Assembly: GCA_053919585.1 (NCBI GenBank)
Contig: CM132808.1
Strand: one strand, 5' to 3'
From: Euprymna scolopes
Taxonomy: Eukaryota
Length of the DNA stretch: 64,000 nucleotides
The notes beneath the pieces were generated by a model that had not been told where the DNA came from, did no database searches, and saw nothing but the letters and a program-made list of their open reading frames with translations. The position numbers were made by a program, and so were the translations under genes. The stretch's first letter is position 1. Every line of letters begins with the position of its first letter. Positions 1 to 51,768 of the stretch are shown here, in pieces.

Positions 1-3000
1 AATGCTTTTAAACCCAATACTGAGAAAATGCTTTTAAACCCAATACTGAGAAAATGCTTTGAAACCCAATACCGAGAAAATGCTTTGAAACCCAATACTG
101 AGAAAATGCTTTGAAACCCAATACTGAGAAAATGCTTTGAAACCCAATACTGAGAAAATGCTTTGAAACCCAATACTGAGAAAATGCTTTTAAACCCAAT
201 ACTGAGAAAATGCTTTGAAACCCAATACCGAGAAAATGCTTTGAAACCCAATACTGAGAAAATGCTTTGAAACCCAATACTGAGAAAATGCTTTGAAACC
301 CAATACTGAGAAAATGCTTTTAAACCCAATACTGAGAAAATGCTTTTAAACCCAATACTGAGAAAATGCTTTGAAACCCAATACTGAGAAAATGCTTTGA
401 AACCCAATACTGAGAAAATGCTTTGAAACCCAATACTGAGAAAATGCTTTGAAACCCAATACCGAGAAAATGCTTTTAAACCCAATACTGAGAAAATGCT
501 TTGAAACCCAATACTGAGAAAATGCTTTTAAACCCAATACTGAGAAAATGCTTTGAAACCCAATACCGAGAAAATGCTTTTAAACCCAATACTGAGAAAA
601 TGCTTTGAAACCCAATACTGAGAAAATGCTTTGAAACCCAATACTGAGAAAATGCTTTGAAACCCAATACTGAGAAAATGCTTTGAAACCCAATACTGAG
701 AAAATGCTTTGAAACCCAATACTGAGAAAATGCTTTTAAACCCAATACTGAGAAAATGCTTTGAAACCCAATACTGAGAAAATGCTTTGAAACCCAATAC
801 CGAGAAAATGCTTTTAAACCCAATACTGAGAAAATGCTTTGAAACCCAATACTGAGAAAATGCTTTGAAACCCAATACTGAGAAAATGCTTTGAAACCCA
901 ATACTGAGAAAATGCTTTGAAACCCAATACTGAGAAAATGCTTTGAAACCCAATACTGAGAAAATGCTTTGAAACCCAATACCGAGAAAATGCTTTGAAA
1001 CCCAATACTGAGAAAATGCTTTGAAACCCAATACTGAGAAAATGCTTTTAAACCCAATACTGAGAAAATGCTTTGAAACCCAATACCGAGAAAATGCTTT
1101 GAAACCCAATACTGAGAAAATGCTTTGAAACCCAATACTGAGAAAATGCTTTGAAACCCAATACTGAGAAAATGCTTTGAAACCCAATACTGAGAAAATG
1201 CTTTGAAACCCAATACTGAGAAAATGCTTTTAAACCCAATACTGAGAAAATGCTTTTAAACCCAATACTGAGAAAATGCTTTGAAACCCAATACTGAGAA
1301 AATGCTTTTAAACCCAATACCGAGAAAATGCTTTGAAACCCAATACTGAGAAAATGCTTTGAAACCCAATACCGAGAAAATGCTTTGAAACCCAATACTG
1401 AGAAAATGCTTTGAAACCCAATACTGAGAAAATGCTTTTAAACCCAATACTGAGAAAATGCTTTGAAACCCAATACCGAGAAAATGCTTTGAAACCCAAT
1501 ACTGAGAAAATGCTTTTAAACCCAATACTGAGAAAATGCTTTGAAACCCAATACTGAGAAAATGCTTTGAAACCCAATACTGAGAAAATGCTTTTAAACC
1601 CAATACTGAGAAAATGCTTTTAAACCCAATACTGAGAAAATGCTTTGAAACCCAATACTGAGAAAATGCTTTTAAACCCAATACTGAGAAAATGCTTTGA
1701 AACCCAATACCGAGAAAATGCTTTGAAACCCAATACTGAGAAAATGCTTTGAAACCCAATACTGAGAAAATGCTTTGAAACCCAATACTGAGAAAATGCT
1801 TTGAAACCCAATACTGAGAAAATGCTTTTAAACCCAATACTGAGAAAATGCTTTGAAACCCAATACCGAGAAAATGCTTTGAAACCCAATACTGAGAAAA
1901 TGCTTTGAAACCCAATACTGAGAAAATGCTTTGAAACCCAATACTGAGAAAATGCTTTTAAACCCAATACTGAGAAAATGCTTTTAAACCCAATACTGAG
2001 AAAATGCTTTGAAACCCAATACTGAGAAAATGCTTTGAAACCCAATACTGAGAAAATGCTTTGAAACCCAATACTGAGAAAATGCTTTGAAACCCAATAC
2101 CGAGAAAATGCTTTTAAACCCAATACTGAGAAAATGCTTTGAAACCCAATACTGAGAAAATGCTTTTAAACCCAATACTGAGAAAATGCTTTGAAACCCA
2201 ATACCGAGAAAATGCTTTTAAACCCAATACTGAGAAAATGCTTTGAAACCCAATACTGAGAAAATGCTTTGAAACCCAATACTGAGAAAATGCTTTGAAA
2301 CCCAATACTGAGAAAATGCTTTGAAACCCAATACTGAGAAAATGCTTTGAAACCCAATACTGAGAAAATGCTTTTAAAACCCAATACTGAGAAAATGCTT
2401 TGAAACCCAATACTGAGAAAATGCTTTGAAACCCAATACCGAGAAAATGCTTTTAAACCCAATACTGAGAAAATGCTTTGAAACCCAATACTGAGAAAAT
2501 GCTTTGAAACCCAATACTGAGAAAATGCTTTGAAACCCAATACTGAGAAAATGCTTTGAAACCCAATACTGAGAAAATGCTTTGAAACCCAATACTGAGA
2601 AAATGCTTTGAAACCCAATACCGAGAAAATGCTTTGAAACCCAATACTGAGAAAATGCTTTTAAACCCAATACTGAGAAAATGCTTTTAAACCCAATACT
2701 GAGAAAATGCTTTGAAACCCAATACCGAGAAAATGCTTTGAAACCCAATACTGAGAAAATGCTTTGAAACCCAATACTGAGAAAATGCTTTGAAACCCAA
2801 TACTGAGAAAATGCTTTGAAACCCAATACTGAGAAAATGCTTTGAAACCCAATACTGAGAAAATGCTTTTAAACCCAATACTGAGAAAATGCTTTTAAAC
2901 CCAATACTGAGAAAATGCTTTGAAACCCAATACCGAGAAAATGCTTTTAAACCCAATACTGAGAAAATGCTTTGAAACCCAATACTGAGAAAATGCTTTG

Positions 3001-6000
3001 AAACCCAATACTGAGAAAATGCTTTGAAACCCAATACTAAGAAAATGCTTTTAAACCCAATACTGAGAAAATGCTTTTAAACCCAATACTGAGAAAATGC
3101 TTTGAAACCCAATACCGAGAAAATGCTTTTAAACCCAATACTGAGAAAATGCTTTGAAACCCAATACTGAGAAAATGCTTTGAAACCCAATACTGAGAAA
3201 ATGCTTTGAAACCCAATACTGAGAAAATGCTTTGAAACCCAATACTGAGAAAATGCTTTGAAACCCAATACTGAGAAAATGCTTTGAAACCCAATACCGA
3301 GAAAATGCTTTGAAACCCAATACTGAGAAAATGCTTTTAAACCCAATACTGAGAAAATGCTTTTAAACCCAATACTGAGAAAATGCTTTGAAACCCAATA
3401 CTGAGAAAATGCTTTGAAACCCAATACCGAGAAAATGCTTTGAAACCCAATACTGAGAAAATGCTTTGAAACCCAATACTGAGAAAATGCTTTGAAACCC
3501 AATACTGAGAAAATGCTTTGAAACCCAATACTGAGAAAATGCTTTGAAACCCAATACTGAGAAAATGCTTTGAAACCCAATACTGAGAAAATGCTTTGAA
3601 ACCCAATACTGAGAAAATGCTTTGAAACCCAATACTGAGAAAATGCTTTGAAACCCAATACCGAGAAAATGCTTTGAAACCCAATACTGAGAAAATGCTT
3701 TGAAACCCAATACTGAGAAAATGCTTTGAAACCCAATACTGAGAAAATGCTTTGAAACCCAATACCGAGAAAATGCTTTGAAACCCAATACTGAGAAAAT
3801 GCTTTGAAACCCAATACTGAGAAAATGCTTTGAAACCCAATACTGAGAAAATGCTTTGAAACCCAATACTGAGAAAATGCTTTGAAACCCAATACCGAGA
3901 AAATGCTTTGAAACCCAATACTGAGAAAATGCTTTGAAACCCAATACTGAGAAAATGCTTTGAAACCCAATACTGAGAAAATGCTTTGAAACCCAATACT
4001 GAGAAAATGCTTTGAAACCCAATACTGAGAAAATGCTTTGAAACCCAATACTGAGAAAATGCTTTGAAACCCAATACTGAGAAAATGCTTTGAAACCCAA
4101 TACTGAGAAAATGCTTTGAAACCCAATACCGAGAAAATGCTTTGAAACCCAATACTGAGAAAATGCTTTGAAACCCAATACTGAGAAAATGCTTTGAAAC
4201 CCAATACTGAGAAAATGCTTTGAAACCCAATACTGAGAAAATGCTTTGAAACCCAATACTGAGAAAATGCTTTGAAACCCAATACTGAGAAAATGCTTTG
4301 AAACCCAATACAGAGAAAATGCTTTGAAACCCAATACTGAGAAAATGCTTTGAAACCCAATACTGAGAAAATGCTTTGAAACCCAATACCGAGAAAATGC
4401 TTTGAAACCCAATACTGAGAAAATGCTTTGAAACCCAATACTGAGAAAATGCTTTGAAACCCAATACTGAGAAAATGCTTTGAAACCCAATACTGAGAAA
4501 ATGCTTTGAAACCCAATACCGAGAAAATGCTTTGAAACCCAATACTGAGAAAATGCTTTGAAACCCAATACTGAGAAAATGCTTTGAAACCCAATACTGA
4601 GAAAATGCTTTGAAACCCAATACTGAGAAAATGCTTTGAAACCCAATACCGAGAAAATGCTTTGAAACCCAATACTGAGAAAATGCTTTGAAACCCAATA
4701 CTGAGAAAATGCTTTGAAACCCAATACTGAGAAAATGCTTTGAAACCCAATACTGAGAAAATGCTTTGAAACCCAATACTGAGAAAATGCTTTGAAACCC
4801 AATACTGAGAAAATGCTTTGAAACCCAATACTGAGAAAATGCTTTGAAACCCAATACTGAGAAAATGCTTTGAAACCCAATACTGAGAAAATGCTTTGAA
4901 ACCCAATACTGAGAAAATGCTTTGAAACCCAATACTGAGAAAATGCTTTGAAACCCAATACTGAGAAAATGCTTTGAAACCCAATACTGAGAAAATGCTT
5001 TGAAACCCAATACTGAGAAAATGCTTTGAAACCCAATACTGAGAAAATGCTTTGAAACCCAATACTGAGAAAATGCTTTGAAACCCAATACTGAGAAAAT
5101 GCTTTGAAACCCAATACTGAGAAAATGCTTTGAAACCCAATACTGAGAAAATGCTTTGAAACCCAATACTGAGAAAATGCTTTGAAACCCAATACTGAGA
5201 AAATGCTTTGAAACCCAATACTGAGAAAATGCTTTGAAACCCAATACTGAGAAAATGCTTTGAAACCCAATACTGAGAAAATGCTTTGAAACCCAATACT
5301 GAGAAAATGCTTTGAAACCCAATACTGAGAAAATGCTTTGAAACCCAATACTGAGAAAATGCTTTGAAACCCAATACTGAGAAAATGCTTTGAAACCCAA
5401 TACTGAGAAAATGCTTTGAAACCCAATACTGAGAAAATGCTTTGAAACCCAATACTGAGAAAATGCTTTGAAACCCAATACTGAGAAAATGCTTTGAAAC
5501 CCAATACTGAGAAAATGCTTTGAAACCCAATACTGAGAAAATGCTTTGAAACCCAATACTGAGAAAATGCTTTGAAACCCAATACTGAGAAAATGCTTTG
5601 AAACCCAATACTGAGAAAATGCTTTGAAACCCAATACTGAGAAAATGCTTTGAAACCCAATACTGAGAAAATGCTTTGAAACCCAATACTGAGAAAATGC
5701 TTTGAAACCCAATACTGAGAAAATGCTTTGAAACCCAATACTGAGAAAATGCTTTGAAACCCAATACTGAGAAAATGCTTTGAAACCCAATACTGAGAAA
5801 ATGCTTTGAAACCCACTGAGAAAATGCTTTGAAACCCAATACTGAGAAAATGCTTTGAAACCCAATACTGAGAAAATGCTTTGAAACCCAATACTGAGAA
5901 AATGCTTTGAAACCAATACTGAGAAAATGCTTTGAAACCCAATACTGAGAAAATGCTTTGAAACCCAATACTGAGAAAATGCTTTGAAACCCAATACTGA

Positions 6001-6320
6001 GAAAATGCTTTGAAACCCAATACTGAGAAAATGCTTTGAAACCCAATACTGAGAAAATGCTTTGAAACCCAATACTGAGAAAATGCTTTGAAACCCAATA
6101 CTGAGAAAATGCTTTGAAACCCAATACTGAGAAAATGCTTTGAAACCCAATACTGAGAAAATGCTTTGAAACCCAATACTGAGAAAATGCTTTGAAACCC
6201 AATACTGAGAAAATGCTTTGAAACCCAATACTGAGAAAATGCTTTGAAACCCAATACTGAGAAAATGCTTTGAAACCCAATACTGAGAAAATGCTTTGAA
6301 ACCAATACTGAGAAAATGCT
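1..6320. repeat. 26-bp tandem array (~243 units, GAAACCCAATACTGAGAAAATGCTTT); candidate terminal/telomere-like satellite
   Basis: Directly visible period of 26. Two recurrent variants: G>T at unit position 1 and T>C at position 13. The array runs off the window start and ends sharply at ...GAAAATGCT|CCCAAGCTGG. Confidence 0.98.
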
Positions 6321-6490
6321 CCCAAGCTGGCTATAACATGTTCGTTCAAAGTTAACAAGTTCTTGATGAGCTGTTCCTTAAAATAAATTACCTCATTCTA
6401 TTTCCACCATAACCGATCATTATGTTGTCCCACCTAATACCCATTTATCTTTATTCTTTAGTGGCCTGTGGGCCTTGATAAACGATGATG
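6321..6490 (+). mobile_element. 5'-truncated CR1-type LINE 3' end fragment abutting the array
   Basis: CCAAGCTGGCTATAAC...AACAAGTTCTTGATGAGCTG...AGTGGCCTGTGGGCCTTGATAA matches the reverse complement of the CR1 3' ends at ~23850-23940, 33400-33740 and 39366-39540. Confidence 0.75.
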
Positions 6491-7784
6491 CTATAGTATA
6501 AAAACAAGGCGCCTTCGTTAAGATAATATTTGTATTGGTCTTCTTTCTAACCTTAAAATATCCCTTTACAAACTGAACTCCATGCTTGCACAGCAAATTT
6601 CAGATGTCGCACTGAGAATTTAGGTGTATTTAAATAATTAGATTGCAGCAAGTTACATTGACATTAAAATCTATCTGAACATATTTTGATCAATTTAAAA
6701 CCATTTAAGTTGGATAATTGGCAGTGGTGCACGTTCAATTTACTTATAATGTTGTCTATCACAGTCGTTTTACAGAAAACAAAAAACAGAAGAAAAGGCT
6801 AAAATCAACAAGAAATTGTAAGTAAAGATCGTCAAAATGACACAGCTGTTTCAATCCTCATGTATTAATAAAATAAATAAACCACGAGTTTTTAGATCAA
6901 AAGGGTCAAGACGTAGCGTCGCCATGTTCATTAAAATGATTAAGGATTTAACCAAAACATTTTAACGATAGCGTCAAATTGGCGAGTAGTTTCTCTTACT
7001 GATGCACTTCTACAAAATAACCTCATAGAAAATGAAGAAAAGACGACAGATATTGCTATCTCTTTAATTTATGCTTTCTTTTTTGCTACATAGATTTTTC
7101 TTGTTGTTTTATGTTCGTTTTGTATGTAAAGAAAGGTTAAGCGTGGTTTCCTTTATAATTCCTTCTCTCGCCATCTTTCTCGTTCTTCCCCACCGTCTCT
7201 ACACCCCCATCCCTCTCTCGTGTGTGTAACTTCCGTTTCCCTTCCACCTCGCCTTTTTTGTTTTCATTCTCTGTTAAGGAAATCCCTTATAAGGAACAAA
7301 GATTAGACTATTTTATTCAGGCATCAAGAATGCCTATGCCAAGTTTAAACTATGAAAATCCCTTTGATCTGCATCTTCACGAGGTTAAAATATTTACTAT
7401 ATTATTTTTTAAGTTAATGGTATGTATAGCTCCCATTTAAGGAACAGTCTATCACCTAATTTAGGAGAAAAGATATTACACATTATCATAGCTTTATGGC
7501 TAAATAGAATGAACAGTCAATTACTCTCTAATAACACTGACAAAGGTATAAACTCGACCCTCAGAATATATGAATAAAATAGAATCTTGTAGTCAACGAA
7601 TTTAAAATAAATGCATTCCTCCAAAAGGTATTCATTTGATTTTTCGAATAAAAAATAAATAATGATATGCCGTGAAACAAATACTAACATTAAATGGTTT
7701 TGTGGGTTTTCTTAAAGTGTAGAGTTTTTTTGCCTAGCAAGAAAATAATTTTAGCACCTAGATTAATCCATTATTCATTAAACT

Positions 7785-19840: not shown

Positions 19841-20215
19841 CCTACAGACACTAGTGTTCCATCTTTTCAAGAATCATCAGTGCAGGATGTCACGATTAAC
19901 ACCTGTCGAGAGATTCGAACTCGGCATCTAACTCATTTCTGACTGCAAATCCACTCGACCATCGTTAACCGCGCGAAATATAGCTGAAATTTAACCATTT
20001 TTATTTTTTAATGTATTTATCGCGTGTCAAAGTGATATAATTATTAGATGATGATCTACGCAGGCGACGTAAATTGACCGACTTTATTTCAACTGTAAAG
20101 TGCCCAACGATAAGAAACAAATTTGTTAAAGGGGCTGGCATAATTATTTGCTGTAATAATTATTACATACCTACAGAATCTAGTGTTCCATTCTTTCGGG
20201 AATCATCAGTGCAGG
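19841..20215 (-). mobile_element. Tandem HHR-like / tRNA-like / HHR-like unit (retrozyme-like or HHR-SINE)
   Basis: Direct repeats 19841-19886 and 20170-20215 (offset 329), each reading on - CCTGCA-CTGATGA-stem-GGAA-CACTAG..TC-TGTAGG. Between them lie A-box-like TGGTCGAGTGG and B-box-like GAGTTCGAATC. Confidence 0.65.
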
Positions 20216-24900: not shown

Positions 24901-26240
24901 CCGTATTATATGTCTTTACCTCAATTAACCACCCCATCAGGTCTGATACTATGGAGGACACATCCTTTTTAAACAGGGAACGCAGAGGTAGATCTTATAT
25001 AAATGTGCGGAAGCTATCCTTGGATTAAGCATTAAGGACGCTGTCCTATCAGCAGGTGGAATGCATTGGGGCTGCCTATTGCCATTTCGTGAATGGATTC
25101 CGGACCATGCAGTGGCTGCTGGTAGCGCTTCTCGATACCATAACAGTGGGAAATTGTTACGGCTTTCCCTTATCATGTGCTACAAAAAATATTTATTTCT
25201 TCATTTGTTTTTCTCTCTTACTTTCCCACTCTGTCCTGCTCTAAGCAAGTCTGTCGACCTGTTCAACAATTCTCAAACCACCATCATGAAAATTTTCTAC
25301 GATTAAAACTAGATCTCTAATATCCAATGTTGATCCCCACTATCATGTTACCTTCTCCAACATCAGGGATCTACGTTCCAACCTTACAGAATTGGAGACC
25401 AAATTACAGGAGACTACACCAGATCTATTATTCCTAAGTATAACTGTCATTCGGCCGATTATTTCCCTAGATGAGTTCGTTATTAAAGGATACTCTAACA
25501 TAACTTCCAAATCTGATCCCCAAGATCGTCATGAGCATGGAATATTATTAACATTACATTAACTACATTAAAGATCGCTTTCCAGAGAATGTCCTAAATT
25601 ATGTGTTTCCGGGTTACACTTGCACTTGCTTAGACTACTGCGTTTATATTTGCTTTCTATCGCCCCCACAACAGCGGAGTTACTATCCTGCCTGCTCATC
25701 CTTCGGCCAATATTCACGTCTGTGGGGACTTCAAAGTTCACAACGTGGAATGATTAACCCACTCAAACAAGACAGATGGTGATGAGAGATTCTGTCATTT
25801 ATCCATTGCTTATGAGCTCACTCAGATTGTTCACGAACCCACCCGTGTGCCCGACACTGATGGCCAGTATGCAAGTCTCCTAGACTTGCTTTCGCAACTT
25901 GCTTTGAGCTATATTCATTTTCCGTTCTGTCCCCACTGGGATTTTCCGACCACTTTGTTGTACCAATTAAGATGAAAACGAAAGGTAATAAGTCCTGAGA
26001 CGTACCTCTCCATCGATACACTATGGCGGACTAGGATAGCTTCCGTACATTTACGTCAGATCTACCTCTGCGTTCCATGTTTAAAATAGATGTGTCTTCT
26101 ATCAGTACCGGTATCAGACCCGACGGAATCGTTAATTTTAGGTATAGACTGTTCCATTCCCTCGAAAAAATTCAAGCAAAAACCTTACAACCAGCCCTGG
26201 TTCTCTCCAGAATGTGCTGCTGCCATTGTGCACAGAAACG
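24900..26240 (+). mobile_element. CR1-type LINE 5' part / APE endonuclease remnant, opposite strand to the adjacent RT half
   Basis: FSNIRDLRSN, IHVCGDFKVHN.EW, LTQIVHEPTRVPD, PLGFSDH, KPYNQPWFSPECAAAIVHRN, collinear with 48850-49780. Confidence 0.85.
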
Positions 26241-27003
26241 TTATTCAGAATTTTATTCAAAAACTTTATTACGAAACGTTATTCAGAAACTTTATTAAGA
26301 AACGTTATTCAGAATTTTATTCAGAAACTTTATTACGAAACGTTATTCAAAATTTTATTCAGAAACTTTATTCAGAAACGTTATTCAGAAACTTTATTAC
26401 GAAACGTTATTCAGAAACGTTATTCAGAAACTTTATTATGAAACATTATTCAGAATTTTATTCAGAAACTTTATTCAGAAACTTTATTCGGAAACTTTAT
26501 TCAGAAACTTTATTACGAAACGTTATTCAGAATTTTATTCAGAAACGTTATTCAAAAACTTTATTCAGAAACTTTATTCAGAATTTTATTCAGAAACTTT
26601 ATTCAGAAACGTTATTCAGAAACTTTATTACGAAACGTTATTCAGAAACGTTATTCAGAAACTTTATTCGGAAACTTTATTAAGAAGCTTTATTCAGAAA
26701 CTTTATTCAGAAACTTTATTCAGAATTTTATTCAGAAACTTTATTCAGAATTTTATTCAGAAACTTTATTCAGAAACTTTATTCAGAAACTTTATTCAGA
26801 AACGTTATTAAACTTTATTCAGAAACGTTATTCAGAAACATTATTCATGAAATTTATTTAGAAACCTTATTCAGAAACTTTATTCAGAAACGTTATTCAG
26901 AAACTTTATTACGAAACGTTATTCAGAAACGTTATTCAGAAACTTTATTCGGAAACTTTATTAAGAAGCTTTATTCAGAAACTTTATTCAGAAACTTTAT
27001 TCA
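26233..27003. repeat. 12-13-bp minisatellite (TTATTCAGAAACT / TTATTCAGAAACG / TTATTCAGAATT / TTATTACGAAACG)
   Basis: About 60 tandem units are directly visible. Confidence 0.95.
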
Positions 27004-48777: not shown

Positions 48778-51768
48778 ATGACAGCTCAAGCAAAGTTACG
48801 TTTAAACCAGGACCAAACTCAAAGAAAACCAACCTGCCTCCTCCCTTGAGGCTTGCATTTACTAATATCCGCGGGCTTAGAACTAACTTAGATGATGTTG
48901 AGTCATTTCTCCTTGAAAACACCCCGGATATCTTAGCATTAAGTGAAACTATCCTCCATTACCTCTAACCACTTTAACATGCCTGGTTATCTCCCACTCT
49001 ACCGTAAGGACTCGGACAGACATATGCATGGACTTGGAGTCTATATTCGAAACACCCTCCCCCTAACTAGAGAAATAAAACTAGAATCAGAGGGCCAGGC
49101 CTTTATGTGCTTCAGACTAAATATGCAAGACAATATTAGCTACTTGTATTTTCTCTACCGCTCTCCCTCAAACCAAGACTGTACCCTAATAAACAAAGTC
49201 TCAGACAGCATAGATATAGCGCTCTCCCTCGATACTAGCGCACAAATACATGTATTTGGTGACTTCAATGTCCACCACAGTAACTGGCTAGGATTCTCTA
49301 ATCACACAGACGTAGCTGGTAGCGCAACACATAGCTTCTCTATATCCCATTCCCTATCTCAGTTGGTTACATTTCCGACACGTTTCCCAGACCAGCGCGA
49401 TCAACATGCCTCACTTCTAGATCTCTTTCTCACAACGGTTCCCAATGACTGTACAATAAAATGCCCACAGCCCACTCGGGAATGCTGATCATGCTGTGAT
49501 AATGGTAGAATTCAGCCTAAATTCTCGCCCTAAAACTGAAGACCCACTGCTCAAAACAACGAGGTATTACAAAAAGGCTGATTGGGAAGCCATCAGGGAG
49601 CTCATCAGAGATGCCCCATGGCAAAATATCTTTACTCTTCCAGCGGAACAGTGTGCAAATGAGACAACTGAATGGTTCAAAACTACTATTGAAGCACATG
49701 TTCCCGCACGGAAATTCTATAACAAGCCCCACTCTCCCCAATGGTTTACTTCTGCTTGTGCAGCTGCCATTTGTCAAAGGCAGCATGCGTTCCGCAGATT
49801 CAACCGACATAAGTCCAGCTCAAATAGACAGAAGTTTATAGAAGCTAGAAATAATTGTAAGAGAGTGATAGAGACAGCTAAGACAGATTACTCTGAAACC
49901 ACCAGAAAGCGCATCGAAGCACAGAAATTAGGAACCCGGGATTTTTGGAAAATCTACAACAGCGTAGTTAATAATGGACAGTGAACTATTCCCCCACTAA
50001 CAAACAATCATGAGGTTGCTTGCACGGCAACTGACAAGGCTAATCTGCTTGCCAGTCGGTTTGCCTCAAACTCCACACTGAACTCGGTACACCACTCACT
50101 CCCTGATTTTCCTCTGCGAACAGACGCCACACTAGACGATTTGAAAATCACCCCTTCTCAGGTACATGCTATTATAAAAAACCTAGACACCTCAAAAGCA
50201 TGTGGACCAGATCTCATCCCGGCTGTGCTATTAAAAAAATGTTCTGCCGAGGTTGCTCCAGTTCTGTCCAAACTTTACAATAAATGCCTTAACGAATCTT
50301 GTTTTCCCGACTGCTGGAAAACCGCCTCTGTGGTACCAGTCTTCAAGAATTCTGGTGAAAGAACTGACCCACTAAATTATCGCCCCATTAGCTTCCTCCC
50401 GCTTTTCGCCAAAATATTTGAGTCCTTAGTAAATCAAGCCCTAGTCCAGCACCTAACAGCTGCTAAACTCCTGACTGACAAACAATATGGATTCAGGCAA
50501 GCCCGTTCAACAGCAGATATCTTAACTGTAGTTTCTGAACGTATATACCGTTCATTGGATAAAACAGGGGAGGATAGAGCGGTGGCCCTTGATATATCTA
50601 AGGCTTTTGACAGGGTATGGCACGATGGTCTTCTAAGGAAAATTAGATCATATGGAATCACTGGAAGAATTCATAATGTAATTAAATCCTTCTTAAGTAG
50701 TAGAAAAATCAAAGTTGTCCTCGACGGACGTACATCCAAACAATATGACATAAATGCGGGAGTACCTCAGGGGTCTATCCTTGGACCTCTATCATGCCTG
50801 ATATTTATAAACGATCTCCCTGATAAAATTGTTTCGGAGATGGGTATATTTGCCGATGACACCACTCTCTATAACAGATATGAGGGGAAAACAAATGAAC
50901 ACATATCCAAGGAAATGGCAGAAACACTAGAGGATGACCTCCAATCCATAATGGAATGGGGACAAAAATGATTGGTCACATTCAATGCTGCTAAGACTAA
51001 GCTTGTTTCCTTCAATAACTACAAGAAACCTTCTCTACCACCAATAGCAATGGCCAAGAACACATTGCCTGAAAGTACTTCTTTTAAACTCCTCGGCCTA
51101 ACGTTTACAGGGAATATGAACTGGAATAGATACATTGAGAGCATTGCCAAGGCTGCTGCAAGGAAGGTTGGCTCCCTCTACCGTGCTAGAAAACTACTTA
51201 CGCCTGACAGTATCCTATACCTCTATAAGGCAACCATTCGCCCATGTATGGAGTACTGTTGTCACATCTGGGCTGGTGCATCTGCTGCTTGTCTCTCGCT
51301 CCTGGACAGGGTTCAAAAGAGAGTCGCCAACCTGATAGGTCCTGAACTGTCATCTAGACTTCAACCTCTGTCCCATCGACGAGATGTTGCATCCCTCTGT
51401 CTGTTCTACAAATACTTTAATGGTGAATGCTCTGACGAACTGCAAACACTTGTACCTCCCCGACGTAACTACCCCCGACAAACCTGACAAGCTACTAAGT
51501 GTCATCCCTTTACAGTAGAGATCCCTAGGTGCAAGAAAGCCTTTTACTCCAATAGTTTCTTCCCCAGAACTGCGGGTCTTTGGAACTCCCTTCCGGGATT
51601 CTGCTTTCCGAACTGCAATGATATGCAGAAGTTCAAGTGTAATGTTAACAAACATCTTTCTACTCTTCTCCCTTCATAATGACCCCGTTAATTAAGTCCC
51701 TAATAGTAGCCCCCTGCTTCAAAGTGGCACTGTGCCTTGTTTGTGGTGAAAATTGGATTAAAAAAAAT
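48778..51768 (+). mobile_element. Near full-length CR1-type LINE ORF2 (APE endonuclease + RT), inactivated by a few frameshifts and stops
   Basis: FTNIRGL, GDFNVHH, YRPISFL, QYGFR, ALDISKAFDRVWH, GVPQGSILGP, FADDTT, IRPCMEYCCHIW. Premature TGA at 49982-49984, 50969-50971 and 51485-51487. 3' UTR with AGTGGC..GCCTTG and an A tail. Confidence 0.96.

What the first reader, a model, noticed from the sequence alone, without database searches (positions are those of the whole stretch)
35..2921. Hidden higher-order duplication: a 48-unit variant code is repeated 63 units away
Seen: coding units as A (consensus), B (G1>T) and C (T13>C), 35-1282 reads BCAAAABCAAABBAAACBABCBAAAAABACBAAAAACAABCAAAAABB. 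The same string recurs at 1673-2921 with one unit different (A at 1023 versus B at 2662) and one extra A base near 2380. A second 11-unit word, CBAAAAACABB, occurs at ~2428-2713 and ~3104-3389. Inference: the array grows by copying long blocks (unequal exchange, break-induced replication or rolling circle), not by unit-by-unit templated addition. If the array is terminal, this suggests telomerase-independent maintenance.
Basis: partly seen in the sequence, partly recalled or inferred. Interest (0 to 1): 0.7.

Follow-up and report, generated by a model that had tools for sequence, protein, structure and literature searches.

The report
Block duplication inside an internal minisatellite
The repeated "variant code" is real, but it sits in an ordinary 6.8-kb minisatellite that grew out of a jumping-element copy 7.3 Mb inside a chromosome with a normal TTAGGG telomere, so it says nothing about telomere maintenance.

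Summary
The window edge cuts the array. The array runs from C26:7315515 to window 6320, 261 units of 26 bp. The variant code of units 8-66 (window -259 to 1274) recurs at units 71-129 (1379-2913), 63 units further on. The local score is 21.95, against a shuffle maximum of 8.6-8.75. At base level the lag-1638 identity starts at the first array base and holds 6 substitutions and one extra A. The 11-unit word at lag 26 exists but is marginal (p about 0.04), and lag 26 has no autocorrelation peak.

The array is not terminal. It lies 7.3 Mb inside a 110.9-Mb contig whose far end carries about 150 TTAGGG repeats. The unit occurs nowhere else in the 5.9-Gb genome. Its two flanks are the two halves of one copy of a dispersed, A-tailed element with at least 548 copies, and the other copies hold that 26-bp segment once.

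Best reading: a transposable-element-derived minisatellite with one recent tandem duplication of about 63 units, made by out-of-register exchange or repair. Copying in blocks is supported. Telomerase-independent maintenance is refuted. The reads available were too short to rule out an assembly artefact. Two other notes of this scan cover the same stretch.

The parts
1..6320 (+). Window part of the 26-bp minisatellite. The whole array is C26:7315515-7322320 (261 units). It starts 486-488 bp upstream of the window, at about L002:9512-9515.
   Evidence: TRF: period 26, 243.2 copies, 98% matches. Unit census: 174 A, 35 B and 27 C in the window. Upstream extension and left junction.
1..1274 (+). 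Copy 1 of the duplicated block, window part. The unambiguous block is units 8-66, window -259 to 1274. The base-level identity starts at -487.
1275..1378 (+). Units 67-70 (A D A C), between the two unambiguous blocks. They match units 4-7 (A C A x) at unit position 21 but not at position 9, so they may be the diverged head of copy 2. They include the only D unit (G9T+T21C), at 1301.
1379..2913 (+). Copy 2 of the duplicated block (units 71-129), 63 units (1,638/1,639 bp) downstream of copy 1.
   Evidence: Score 21.95 versus shuffle max 8.6-8.75. Differences from copy 1 within the block: window -4/1634, 9/1647, 1023/2662, plus an extra A at 2379.
2420..2705 (+). 11-unit word CBAAAAACABB, first occurrence (inside copy 2).
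   Evidence: Marginal: p about 0.04.
3096..3381 (+). 11-unit word CBAAAAACABB, second occurrence, 26 units downstream.
3382..4681 (+). Middle zone (units 148-197): only A and C units, with no B.
   Evidence: Counts A41, C8, x1.
4682..6320 (+). Pure zone (units 198-260): consensus units only, apart from three units with 1-3-bp deletions (5800, 5901, 6290).
6321..6504 (+). 3' half of the dispersed element copy that hosts the array, ending in the A-rich tail TATAGTATAAAAA. The 5' half is upstream of the window, at L002:9350-9511.
   Evidence: 158/184 (86%) identity to the majority consensus of 10 other copies; 23-25% outside the element.

Best explanation
This is a single-locus, interstitial minisatellite that arose by tandem amplification of a 26-bp internal segment of one copy of a dispersed, A-tailed (SINE-like) retroposon.

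After the array had built up its interspersed B (G9T) and C (T21C) variants, one out-of-register event between two copies of the array shifted by 63 units duplicated a block of about 63 units (1,638 bp) in tandem at the left end. That event could have been unequal sister-chromatid or homologue exchange, or double-strand-break repair with the invading end re-aligned 63 units away.

The two copies then drifted apart slightly, mostly by A-to-B switches at unit position 9. That pattern looks like short conversion patches or a hot site, not random point mutation.

The array has no telomeric role and probably no function.

Shown: the position, the uniqueness of the unit, the origin in a transposable element, and the duplication as it stands in the assembly. 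Inferred: the mechanism of the duplication and the order of events.
For: Position:
- The window is C26:7316001-7380000 of a 110.86-Mb contig.
- The array is bounded by non-repeat DNA at L002:~9512 and at window 6320.
- The far end of C26 carries (TTAGGG)~150.

Uniqueness:
- The unit has 260 forward and 1 reverse hits at <=3 mismatches in 5.9 Gb, and the array itself has 261 units.
- The array-end-plus-flank pattern hits only this locus.

Origin in a transposable element:
- The right flank is a dispersed repeat whose matches begin exactly at the array edge.
- With the array collapsed to one unit, the locus aligns along its whole length with 10 other copies: 76% in the left half, 19/25 in the unit segment, 86% in the right half, and 23-25% outside the element.
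- The family consensus 31-mer that spans the boundary and the progenitor segment has 548 hits on both strands, with 0 for the control.

Duplication:
- 59 units match with 4 differences; the score is about 23 sd above shuffles; the lag-63 autocorrelation has z about 8.
- 5 of the 6 substitutions between the copies fall at unit position 9.

Precedent: multi-unit duplication by unequal exchange or SDSA is a standard operation on minisatellite maps (PMC2897807). About 23% of human minisatellites/satellites are TE-derived (PMC3389668).
Against: - No long read or independent assembly could be examined. The long-range order therefore rests on the assembly alone.
- The clear match is 59 units, not the 63 that a clean unequal exchange predicts. 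The remaining 4 units agree only at position 21.
- With only about 2 copies of the block, unequal exchange, SDSA with re-invasion, and re-integration of a circle cannot be told apart.
- The element class (SINE-like) is inferred from the A-rich tail and dispersed copies on both strands. Target-site duplications and a promoter head were not established for this family.
Confidence: 0.8

Rival explanations
1. Assembly artefact. The true allele has one copy of the block. The assembler either walked through it twice or strung the two haplotypes' versions in tandem, so the few A/B differences are allelic.
For: - Tandem arrays are error-prone in assembly.
- The differences between the copies are mostly switches between the two common unit types, plus one homopolymer-length change (extra A at 2379), as allelic or read-error differences would be.
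- The lag-63 identity starts at the very first array base, as expected if 'copy 2' were another haplotype's array head.
- No reads could test it.
Against: - There is no gap (N) or contig join in or near the array; the nearest N run is at window 31200.
- Copy 2 is preceded in register by array units, not by flank.
- The unique units at the head of each copy (unit 7 'x' at -285; unit 68 'D' at 1301) must both come from reads. Unit 7's unique path is also seen in an independent run of another study, X3.
- A 6.8-kb array is shorter than typical long reads. This last point is my inference; the sequencing technology of the assembly is unknown.
Confidence: 0.12
2. Rolling-circle or extrachromosomal-circle origin. 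A 63-unit (1.64-kb) circle excised from the array was replicated or re-integrated, giving the tandem block.
For: The two blocks are in direct tandem with a fixed period of 63 units. Arrays of this kind are known substrates for circle formation (general knowledge).
Against: There are only about 2.0-2.1 copies of the block, whereas rolling-circle products usually give several. Nothing distinguishes this from a single unequal exchange, which needs fewer steps. No circle data are available.
Confidence: 0.05
3. A non-canonical terminal (telomere-like) repeat maintained without telomerase by recombination.
For: None beyond the window starting inside the array, which made the array look terminal.
Against: - The array is 7.3 Mb from the contig start and 103.5 Mb from its end.
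- It is flanked on both sides by the two halves of one TE copy.
- It is unique in the genome.
- The same contig ends in TTAGGG repeats.
Confidence: 0.01

Closest known systems
Variant-repeat (MVR-coded) minisatellites such as human MS32/D1S8, MS31A and MS205
   Same: - Unit of tens of bp, a single locus with unique flanks, and two or three base-substitution variants interspersed along the array so that the array can be written as a code.
- Multi-unit duplications and a gradient (polarity) along the array.
- Duplication by unequal exchange, gene conversion or SDSA (PMC2897807; polarity noted in PMC3389668).
   Different: - AT-rich unit (34% GC) in a mollusc-type genome, not a GC-rich human subtelomeric locus.
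- Allelic variation and germline mutation were not tested.
- The duplicated block (63 units) is large compared with the typical events I recall for human loci (my recollection, not tested).
TE-derived minisatellites (for example Alu-derived minisatellites, Jurka & Gentles 2006; the survey of Ahmed & Liang 2012)
   Same: An internal segment of a single retroposon copy is amplified in place, with the two halves of the element left as flanks. The unit is homologous to a single-copy segment of other family members (PMC3389668).
   Different: - 261 units is far above the 2-3 units typical of human TE-derived arrays reported there.
- The host element is an uncharacterised mollusc family.
- Flanking short direct repeats, part of the proposed initiation mechanism, were not clearly seen.
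Higher-order repeats of centromeric satellites (for example alpha satellite)
   Same: A long-period repeat (63 units) laid over a short-period one, recognisable only from unit variants.
   Different: There are only two copies of the long period, at one end of a 6.8-kb array, and no homogenised multi-copy structure. The autocorrelation peak comes from one duplication.
Terminal satellite or recombination-maintained chromosome ends (Chironomus-type complex repeats; ALT)
   Same: A tandem array that changes by block copying.
   Different: This array is not terminal, is not present at other ends, and sits in a genome with canonical TTAGGG ends.

Membership tests
Minisatellite with interspersed variant repeats | Head-to-tail array of a 10-100 bp unit | tested here: met
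   Period 26, 243 copies in the window and 261 in all, 98% matches.
Minisatellite with interspersed variant repeats | Single locus with unique flanking DNA | tested here: met
   260 of the 261 genome hits of the unit lie on the forward strand, as the array does; every hit listed lies in the array and the array has 261 units. The one reverse hit was not located. Both junctions were read.
Minisatellite with interspersed variant repeats | Few recurrent unit variants interspersed so that the array reads as a code | tested here: met
   A 182, B 41 and C 29 units over the whole array; the rare types are D 1, b 1 and x 7.
Minisatellite with interspersed variant repeats | Allelic length and code polymorphism between individuals | not testable with these tools
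   Only k=31 contigs of low-coverage runs were available.
TE-derived tandem repeat | The flanks of the array are contiguous parts of one transposable-element copy | tested here: met
   Left half 111/147 and right half 158/184 identity to the family consensus; 23-25% outside the element.
TE-derived tandem repeat | The unit is homologous to a segment present once in other copies of the element | tested here: met
   19/25 identity to the consensus segment. The consensus across this site has 548 dispersed hits. No tandem doubling elsewhere by an exact pattern (low sensitivity).
TE-derived tandem repeat | Short direct repeats bounding the amplified segment (initiation by slippage) | tested here: inconclusive
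   A TGCT(C) motif occurs left of the array and at the end of each unit, but 30 bp apart in this copy, not 26 (reading).
Telomeric or terminal repeat array | Lies at the physical end of a chromosome | tested here: not met
   7.3 Mb inside a 110.86-Mb contig, with non-repeat DNA on both sides.
Telomeric or terminal repeat array | The same repeat occurs at many or all chromosome ends | tested here: not met
   All hits but one are at this locus.
Telomeric or terminal repeat array | Replaces the canonical telomerase repeat in that genome | tested here: not met
   The far end of C26 carries about 150 TTAGGG units.
Higher-order-repeat satellite | Many tandem copies of a multi-unit period, homogenised as a block | tested here: not met
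   Only two copies of the 63-unit period. No other strong lag: the next-best z is 3.55, at lag 15.

The most novel reading that the evidence does not exclude
The first copy of the duplicated block starts flush with the left boundary of the array, and variants pile up only on that side. This could mean that the left flank (the 5' half of the retroposon) holds a break or recombination hotspot that drives polar, large-block turnover, like human hypervariable minisatellites but in a mollusc. The locus would then be a hypervariable marker whose code could be read between individuals.
Probability: 0.12. Interest if true: 0.35.

Novelty: new member of a known kind. Interest (0 to 1): 0.15.

Why it matters
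It matters little beyond housekeeping. The result removes a false lead (a 26-bp non-canonical telomere or ALT-like maintenance) from this genome. It documents a clean example of a very long (261-unit) minisatellite born inside a retroposon copy, with a datable block duplication. If the locus is polymorphic it could serve as a variant-code marker for population work in this species. It also shows how a window edge can make an internal array look terminal.

Tried and rejected
- The permitted 800-bp left-junction stretch returned only short Logan contigs (49-117 nt in all; at most 82 nt on the array). These cannot test long-range order, and depth could not be calibrated because the unique bins were empty.
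- I searched for a second locus or haplotig with the array and found none.
- I searched for tandem doubling of the same segment in other copies of the element with an exact gapped pattern: 0 hits. Sensitivity is low because the copies are about 75% alike.
- I tested whether the unit folds, as a cause of instability. As single-stranded DNA neither strand folds better than shuffles (-0.4 and -2.2 kcal/mol; z = 1.3 and 0.3).
- I looked for coding potential. The long minus-strand ORFs across the array (up to 1,093 aa) follow mechanically from a unit with no stop codon in any frame, and were not pursued.
- The one reverse-strand hit of the unit elsewhere was not located.

Full report
**What is in the sequence.** The window opens inside a 26-bp tandem array (TRF: 1-6320, period 26, 243.2 copies, 98% matches). 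Cut at AATGCTTT, the window holds:
- 174 consensus units (A);
- 35 units with G9T (B);
- 27 units with T21C (C);
- a handful of singletons.

**Where it lies.** The window is G000:C26:7316001-7380000 on the plus strand of a 110,863,296-bp contig, in a 5.9-Gb, 925-contig assembly. I fetched the 10 kb upstream (L002). The array starts only about 486-488 bp before the window, after non-repeat sequence ending ...CAGAACTGCTCATC. It ends at window 6320, before CCCAAGCTGGCTATAACATG.... The whole array is about 6.8 kb and 261 units, with ordinary DNA on both sides and no N run near it; the nearest is at window 31200.

The far end of the same contig carries about 150 copies of TTAGGG (L004 5092-6000). 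The near end (L003) has no telomere repeat. It starts with a stretch that, by eye, reads like a Tc1/mariner transposase fragment (not scanned against Pfam), followed by 5.3 kb of TA-rich simple repeat.

A genome-wide pattern search for the unit with up to 3 mismatches gives 260 forward hits and 1 reverse hit, with 0 for the control. That matches the array's own 261 units. All 251 dimer hits are forward too. The array is therefore internal, unique to one locus, and sits in a genome with canonical telomeres. Earlier notes of this scan call the genome a mollusc; I did not test that.

**Check of the observation.** Over the whole array the code reads as printed.

The window edge had cut the match. 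It really covers units 8-66 (window -259 to 1274) against units 71-129 (1379-2913): 59 units with 4 unit-level differences, at a lag of 63 units.

I scored a match at a non-A unit as 1, a match at an A unit as 0.15 and a mismatch as -2.
- The block scores 21.95.
- Shuffles of the variant-rich zone that keep neighbour frequencies give mean 4.96, sd 0.72 and max 8.6.
- A simple shuffle gives a max of 8.75.
- The autocorrelation of non-A units peaks at lag 63 (27 matches against 8.5 expected, z about 8). This is the highest of lags 1-119; the next is lag 15, with z = 3.55.

At base level the lag-1638 identity (1639 after the extra A) begins at the very first base of the array (window -487) and runs to 1294. 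It has 6 substitutions and 1 indel, and 5 of the 6 substitutions are at unit position 9. Units 4-7 (A C A x) and 67-70 (A D A C) agree at position 21 and differ only at position 9. The duplicated block is therefore 59 units for certain and plausibly the full 63.

**The second word.** CBAAAAACABB is at 2420-2705 and 3096-3381. With copy 1 removed, to avoid counting the big duplication twice, 4% of shuffles reach its score. Lag 26 shows no autocorrelation peak (z = -0.04). It may be a second, smaller copy event: it matches copy 2's ...CABB rather than copy 1's ...CAAB. The statistics do not require that.

**What the array is made from.**
- The 190 bp just right of the array is a dispersed repeat. 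The first look found 691 candidates, and the 39 matches elsewhere that were scored mostly begin at or within a few bases of the array edge.
- I aligned ten other copies with their upstream sequence (L006-L015).
- I then aligned the locus with its array collapsed to one unit. The left flank, one unit and the right flank together make one colinear copy of that element.
- Identity to the majority consensus is 111/147 in the left half, 19/25 in the unit segment and 158/184 in the right half. Outside the element on either side it is 27/115 and 22/88.
- The element ends in an A-rich tail (TATAGTATAAAAA, window 6492-6504).
- The family consensus 31-mer that spans the left boundary and the progenitor segment has 297 forward and 251 reverse hits at up to 3 mismatches, on most of the large contigs, with 0 for the control.

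Other copies carry this segment once. An exact gapped pattern for a doubled segment found nothing (low sensitivity). No near-identical copy of this locus's unit-plus-flank exists elsewhere.

The minisatellite was therefore born by amplification of an internal 26-bp piece of one retroposon-like copy. TE-derived minisatellites are well documented: about 23% of human minisatellites/satellites, with Alu-derived arrays as the classic case (PMC3389668). Array units are about 98% alike, while the host copy is 14-24% from its family consensus. I infer that the amplification, or its homogenisation, is much younger than the insertion.

**How the duplication most likely arose.** A tandem repeat of a 63-unit block is the expected product of a single out-of-register event between two copies of the array shifted by 63 units. 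The event could be unequal sister-chromatid or homologue exchange, or double-strand-break repair in which the invading end pairs 63 units out of register and copies the intervening units. These are the standard mechanisms given for multi-unit duplication in minisatellite maps (PMC2897807).

Two details fit this:
1. The identity extends a few units beyond one period and reaches the left boundary of the array. The shift is thus about the largest that the homology allowed for an end lying near unit 66.
2. The later differences are nearly all switches between the two common states of position 9. That suggests short conversion patches or a hot site, not random substitution.

Both points are my inference. 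The unit has no self-structure that could explain instability.

Along the array the variants are layered:
- units 0-147: A 81, B 41, C 21;
- units 148-197: A 41, C 8, no B;
- units 198-260: A only, apart from three units with small deletions.

This polarity is typical of minisatellites (PMC3389668). It suggests that recent unit gain or homogenisation happened on the right, while the left keeps an old, complex code.

**What could not be shown.** The only public runs that hold the stretch are low-coverage runs kept as k=31 Logan contigs: X1 and X2 of organism A, and X3 of organism B. On the 800-bp left junction they give contigs of at most 82 nt on the array, which cannot test order over 1.6 kb.

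They do show that array words are abundant in X1 and X2. One X3 contig covers the path through the unique unit 7, which occurs once in the assembly, with one mismatch. So at least the left-end code exists outside the assembly.

A false tandem duplication or a haplotype mix-up therefore remains possible; I put it at about 12%. Against it:
- there is no gap or join in or near the array;
- the continuation into copy 2 is in register;
- both block heads carry unique units that must come from reads;
- the array is short.

**Verdict.** "The array grows by block copying" holds, in the ordinary sense known for minisatellites. The terminal, telomerase-independent reading is refuted. This is a new example of a known kind, a TE-derived, variant-coded minisatellite with a multi-unit duplication, and is of low general interest. 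Two other first-stage notes of this scan describe the same stretch: one as a candidate 26-bp telomere-like repeat, and one as a layered array. My data contradict the first and agree with the second.

Noticed in passing
window 476-6358, minus strand: The minus strand of the array is open in all three frames; ORFs of up to 1,093 aa are listed. This is mechanical: the consensus unit has no stop codon in any frame, and only B units introduce TAA. It is not evidence of a gene.
   Followed up: partly
L005:115-350 (C26:7315115-7315350), left of the host element: A very abundant dispersed repeat (5,214 first-look candidates, 86-91% identity). Contig overhangs show that other copies are preceded by a tRNA-like head (GTGGCGCAGTGGTTAGAGTACTTGGA) followed by GGTTCAATCCTC, probably a tRNA-derived SINE. 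Short 50-bp pieces recur in both orientations around other copies.
   Followed up: partly
window 48943-51487 (+): Broken LINE: four consecutive ORFs, with endonuclease-reverse-transcriptase (PF14529, 1.6e-9) and RVT_1 (PF00078, 1.6e-29) domains.
   Followed up: partly
window 26233-27003: A second minisatellite, 13-bp unit CAGAAACTTTATT, 60 copies, 83% matches. The ORF at 26090-26683 that overlaps its first 450 bp gives only low-complexity Pfam hits.
   Followed up: no
L003 (C26:1-6000) and L004 (C26:110857297-110863296): The contig starts with a stretch that, by eye, reads like a Tc1/mariner transposase fragment (not scanned), followed by 5.3 kb of TA/TATACA-type simple repeat and no telomere. 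It ends with about 150 TTAGGG units, so only one end of this chromosome-scale contig is capped.
   Followed up: partly
unit position 9 across the array (e.g. window -433, -329, -277, 9, 1023 versus their lag-63 partners): Five of the six substitutions between the two block copies fall at the same unit position (G/T/C in CTTT[G]AAA). This may be a conversion-prone or mutation-prone site, or a systematic base-calling weakness next to the T run.
   Followed up: partly
L005:661-742 (units 5-7): A run from a different organism label and study (X3) has an 82-nt contig with one mismatch across the only G9C+T21C unit of the array. This suggests that the left-end code is shared beyond the assembled individual.
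   Followed up: partly
window 19841-20215: Another first-stage note flags a hammerhead/tRNA-like retrozyme candidate here. I did not examine it.
   Followed up: no
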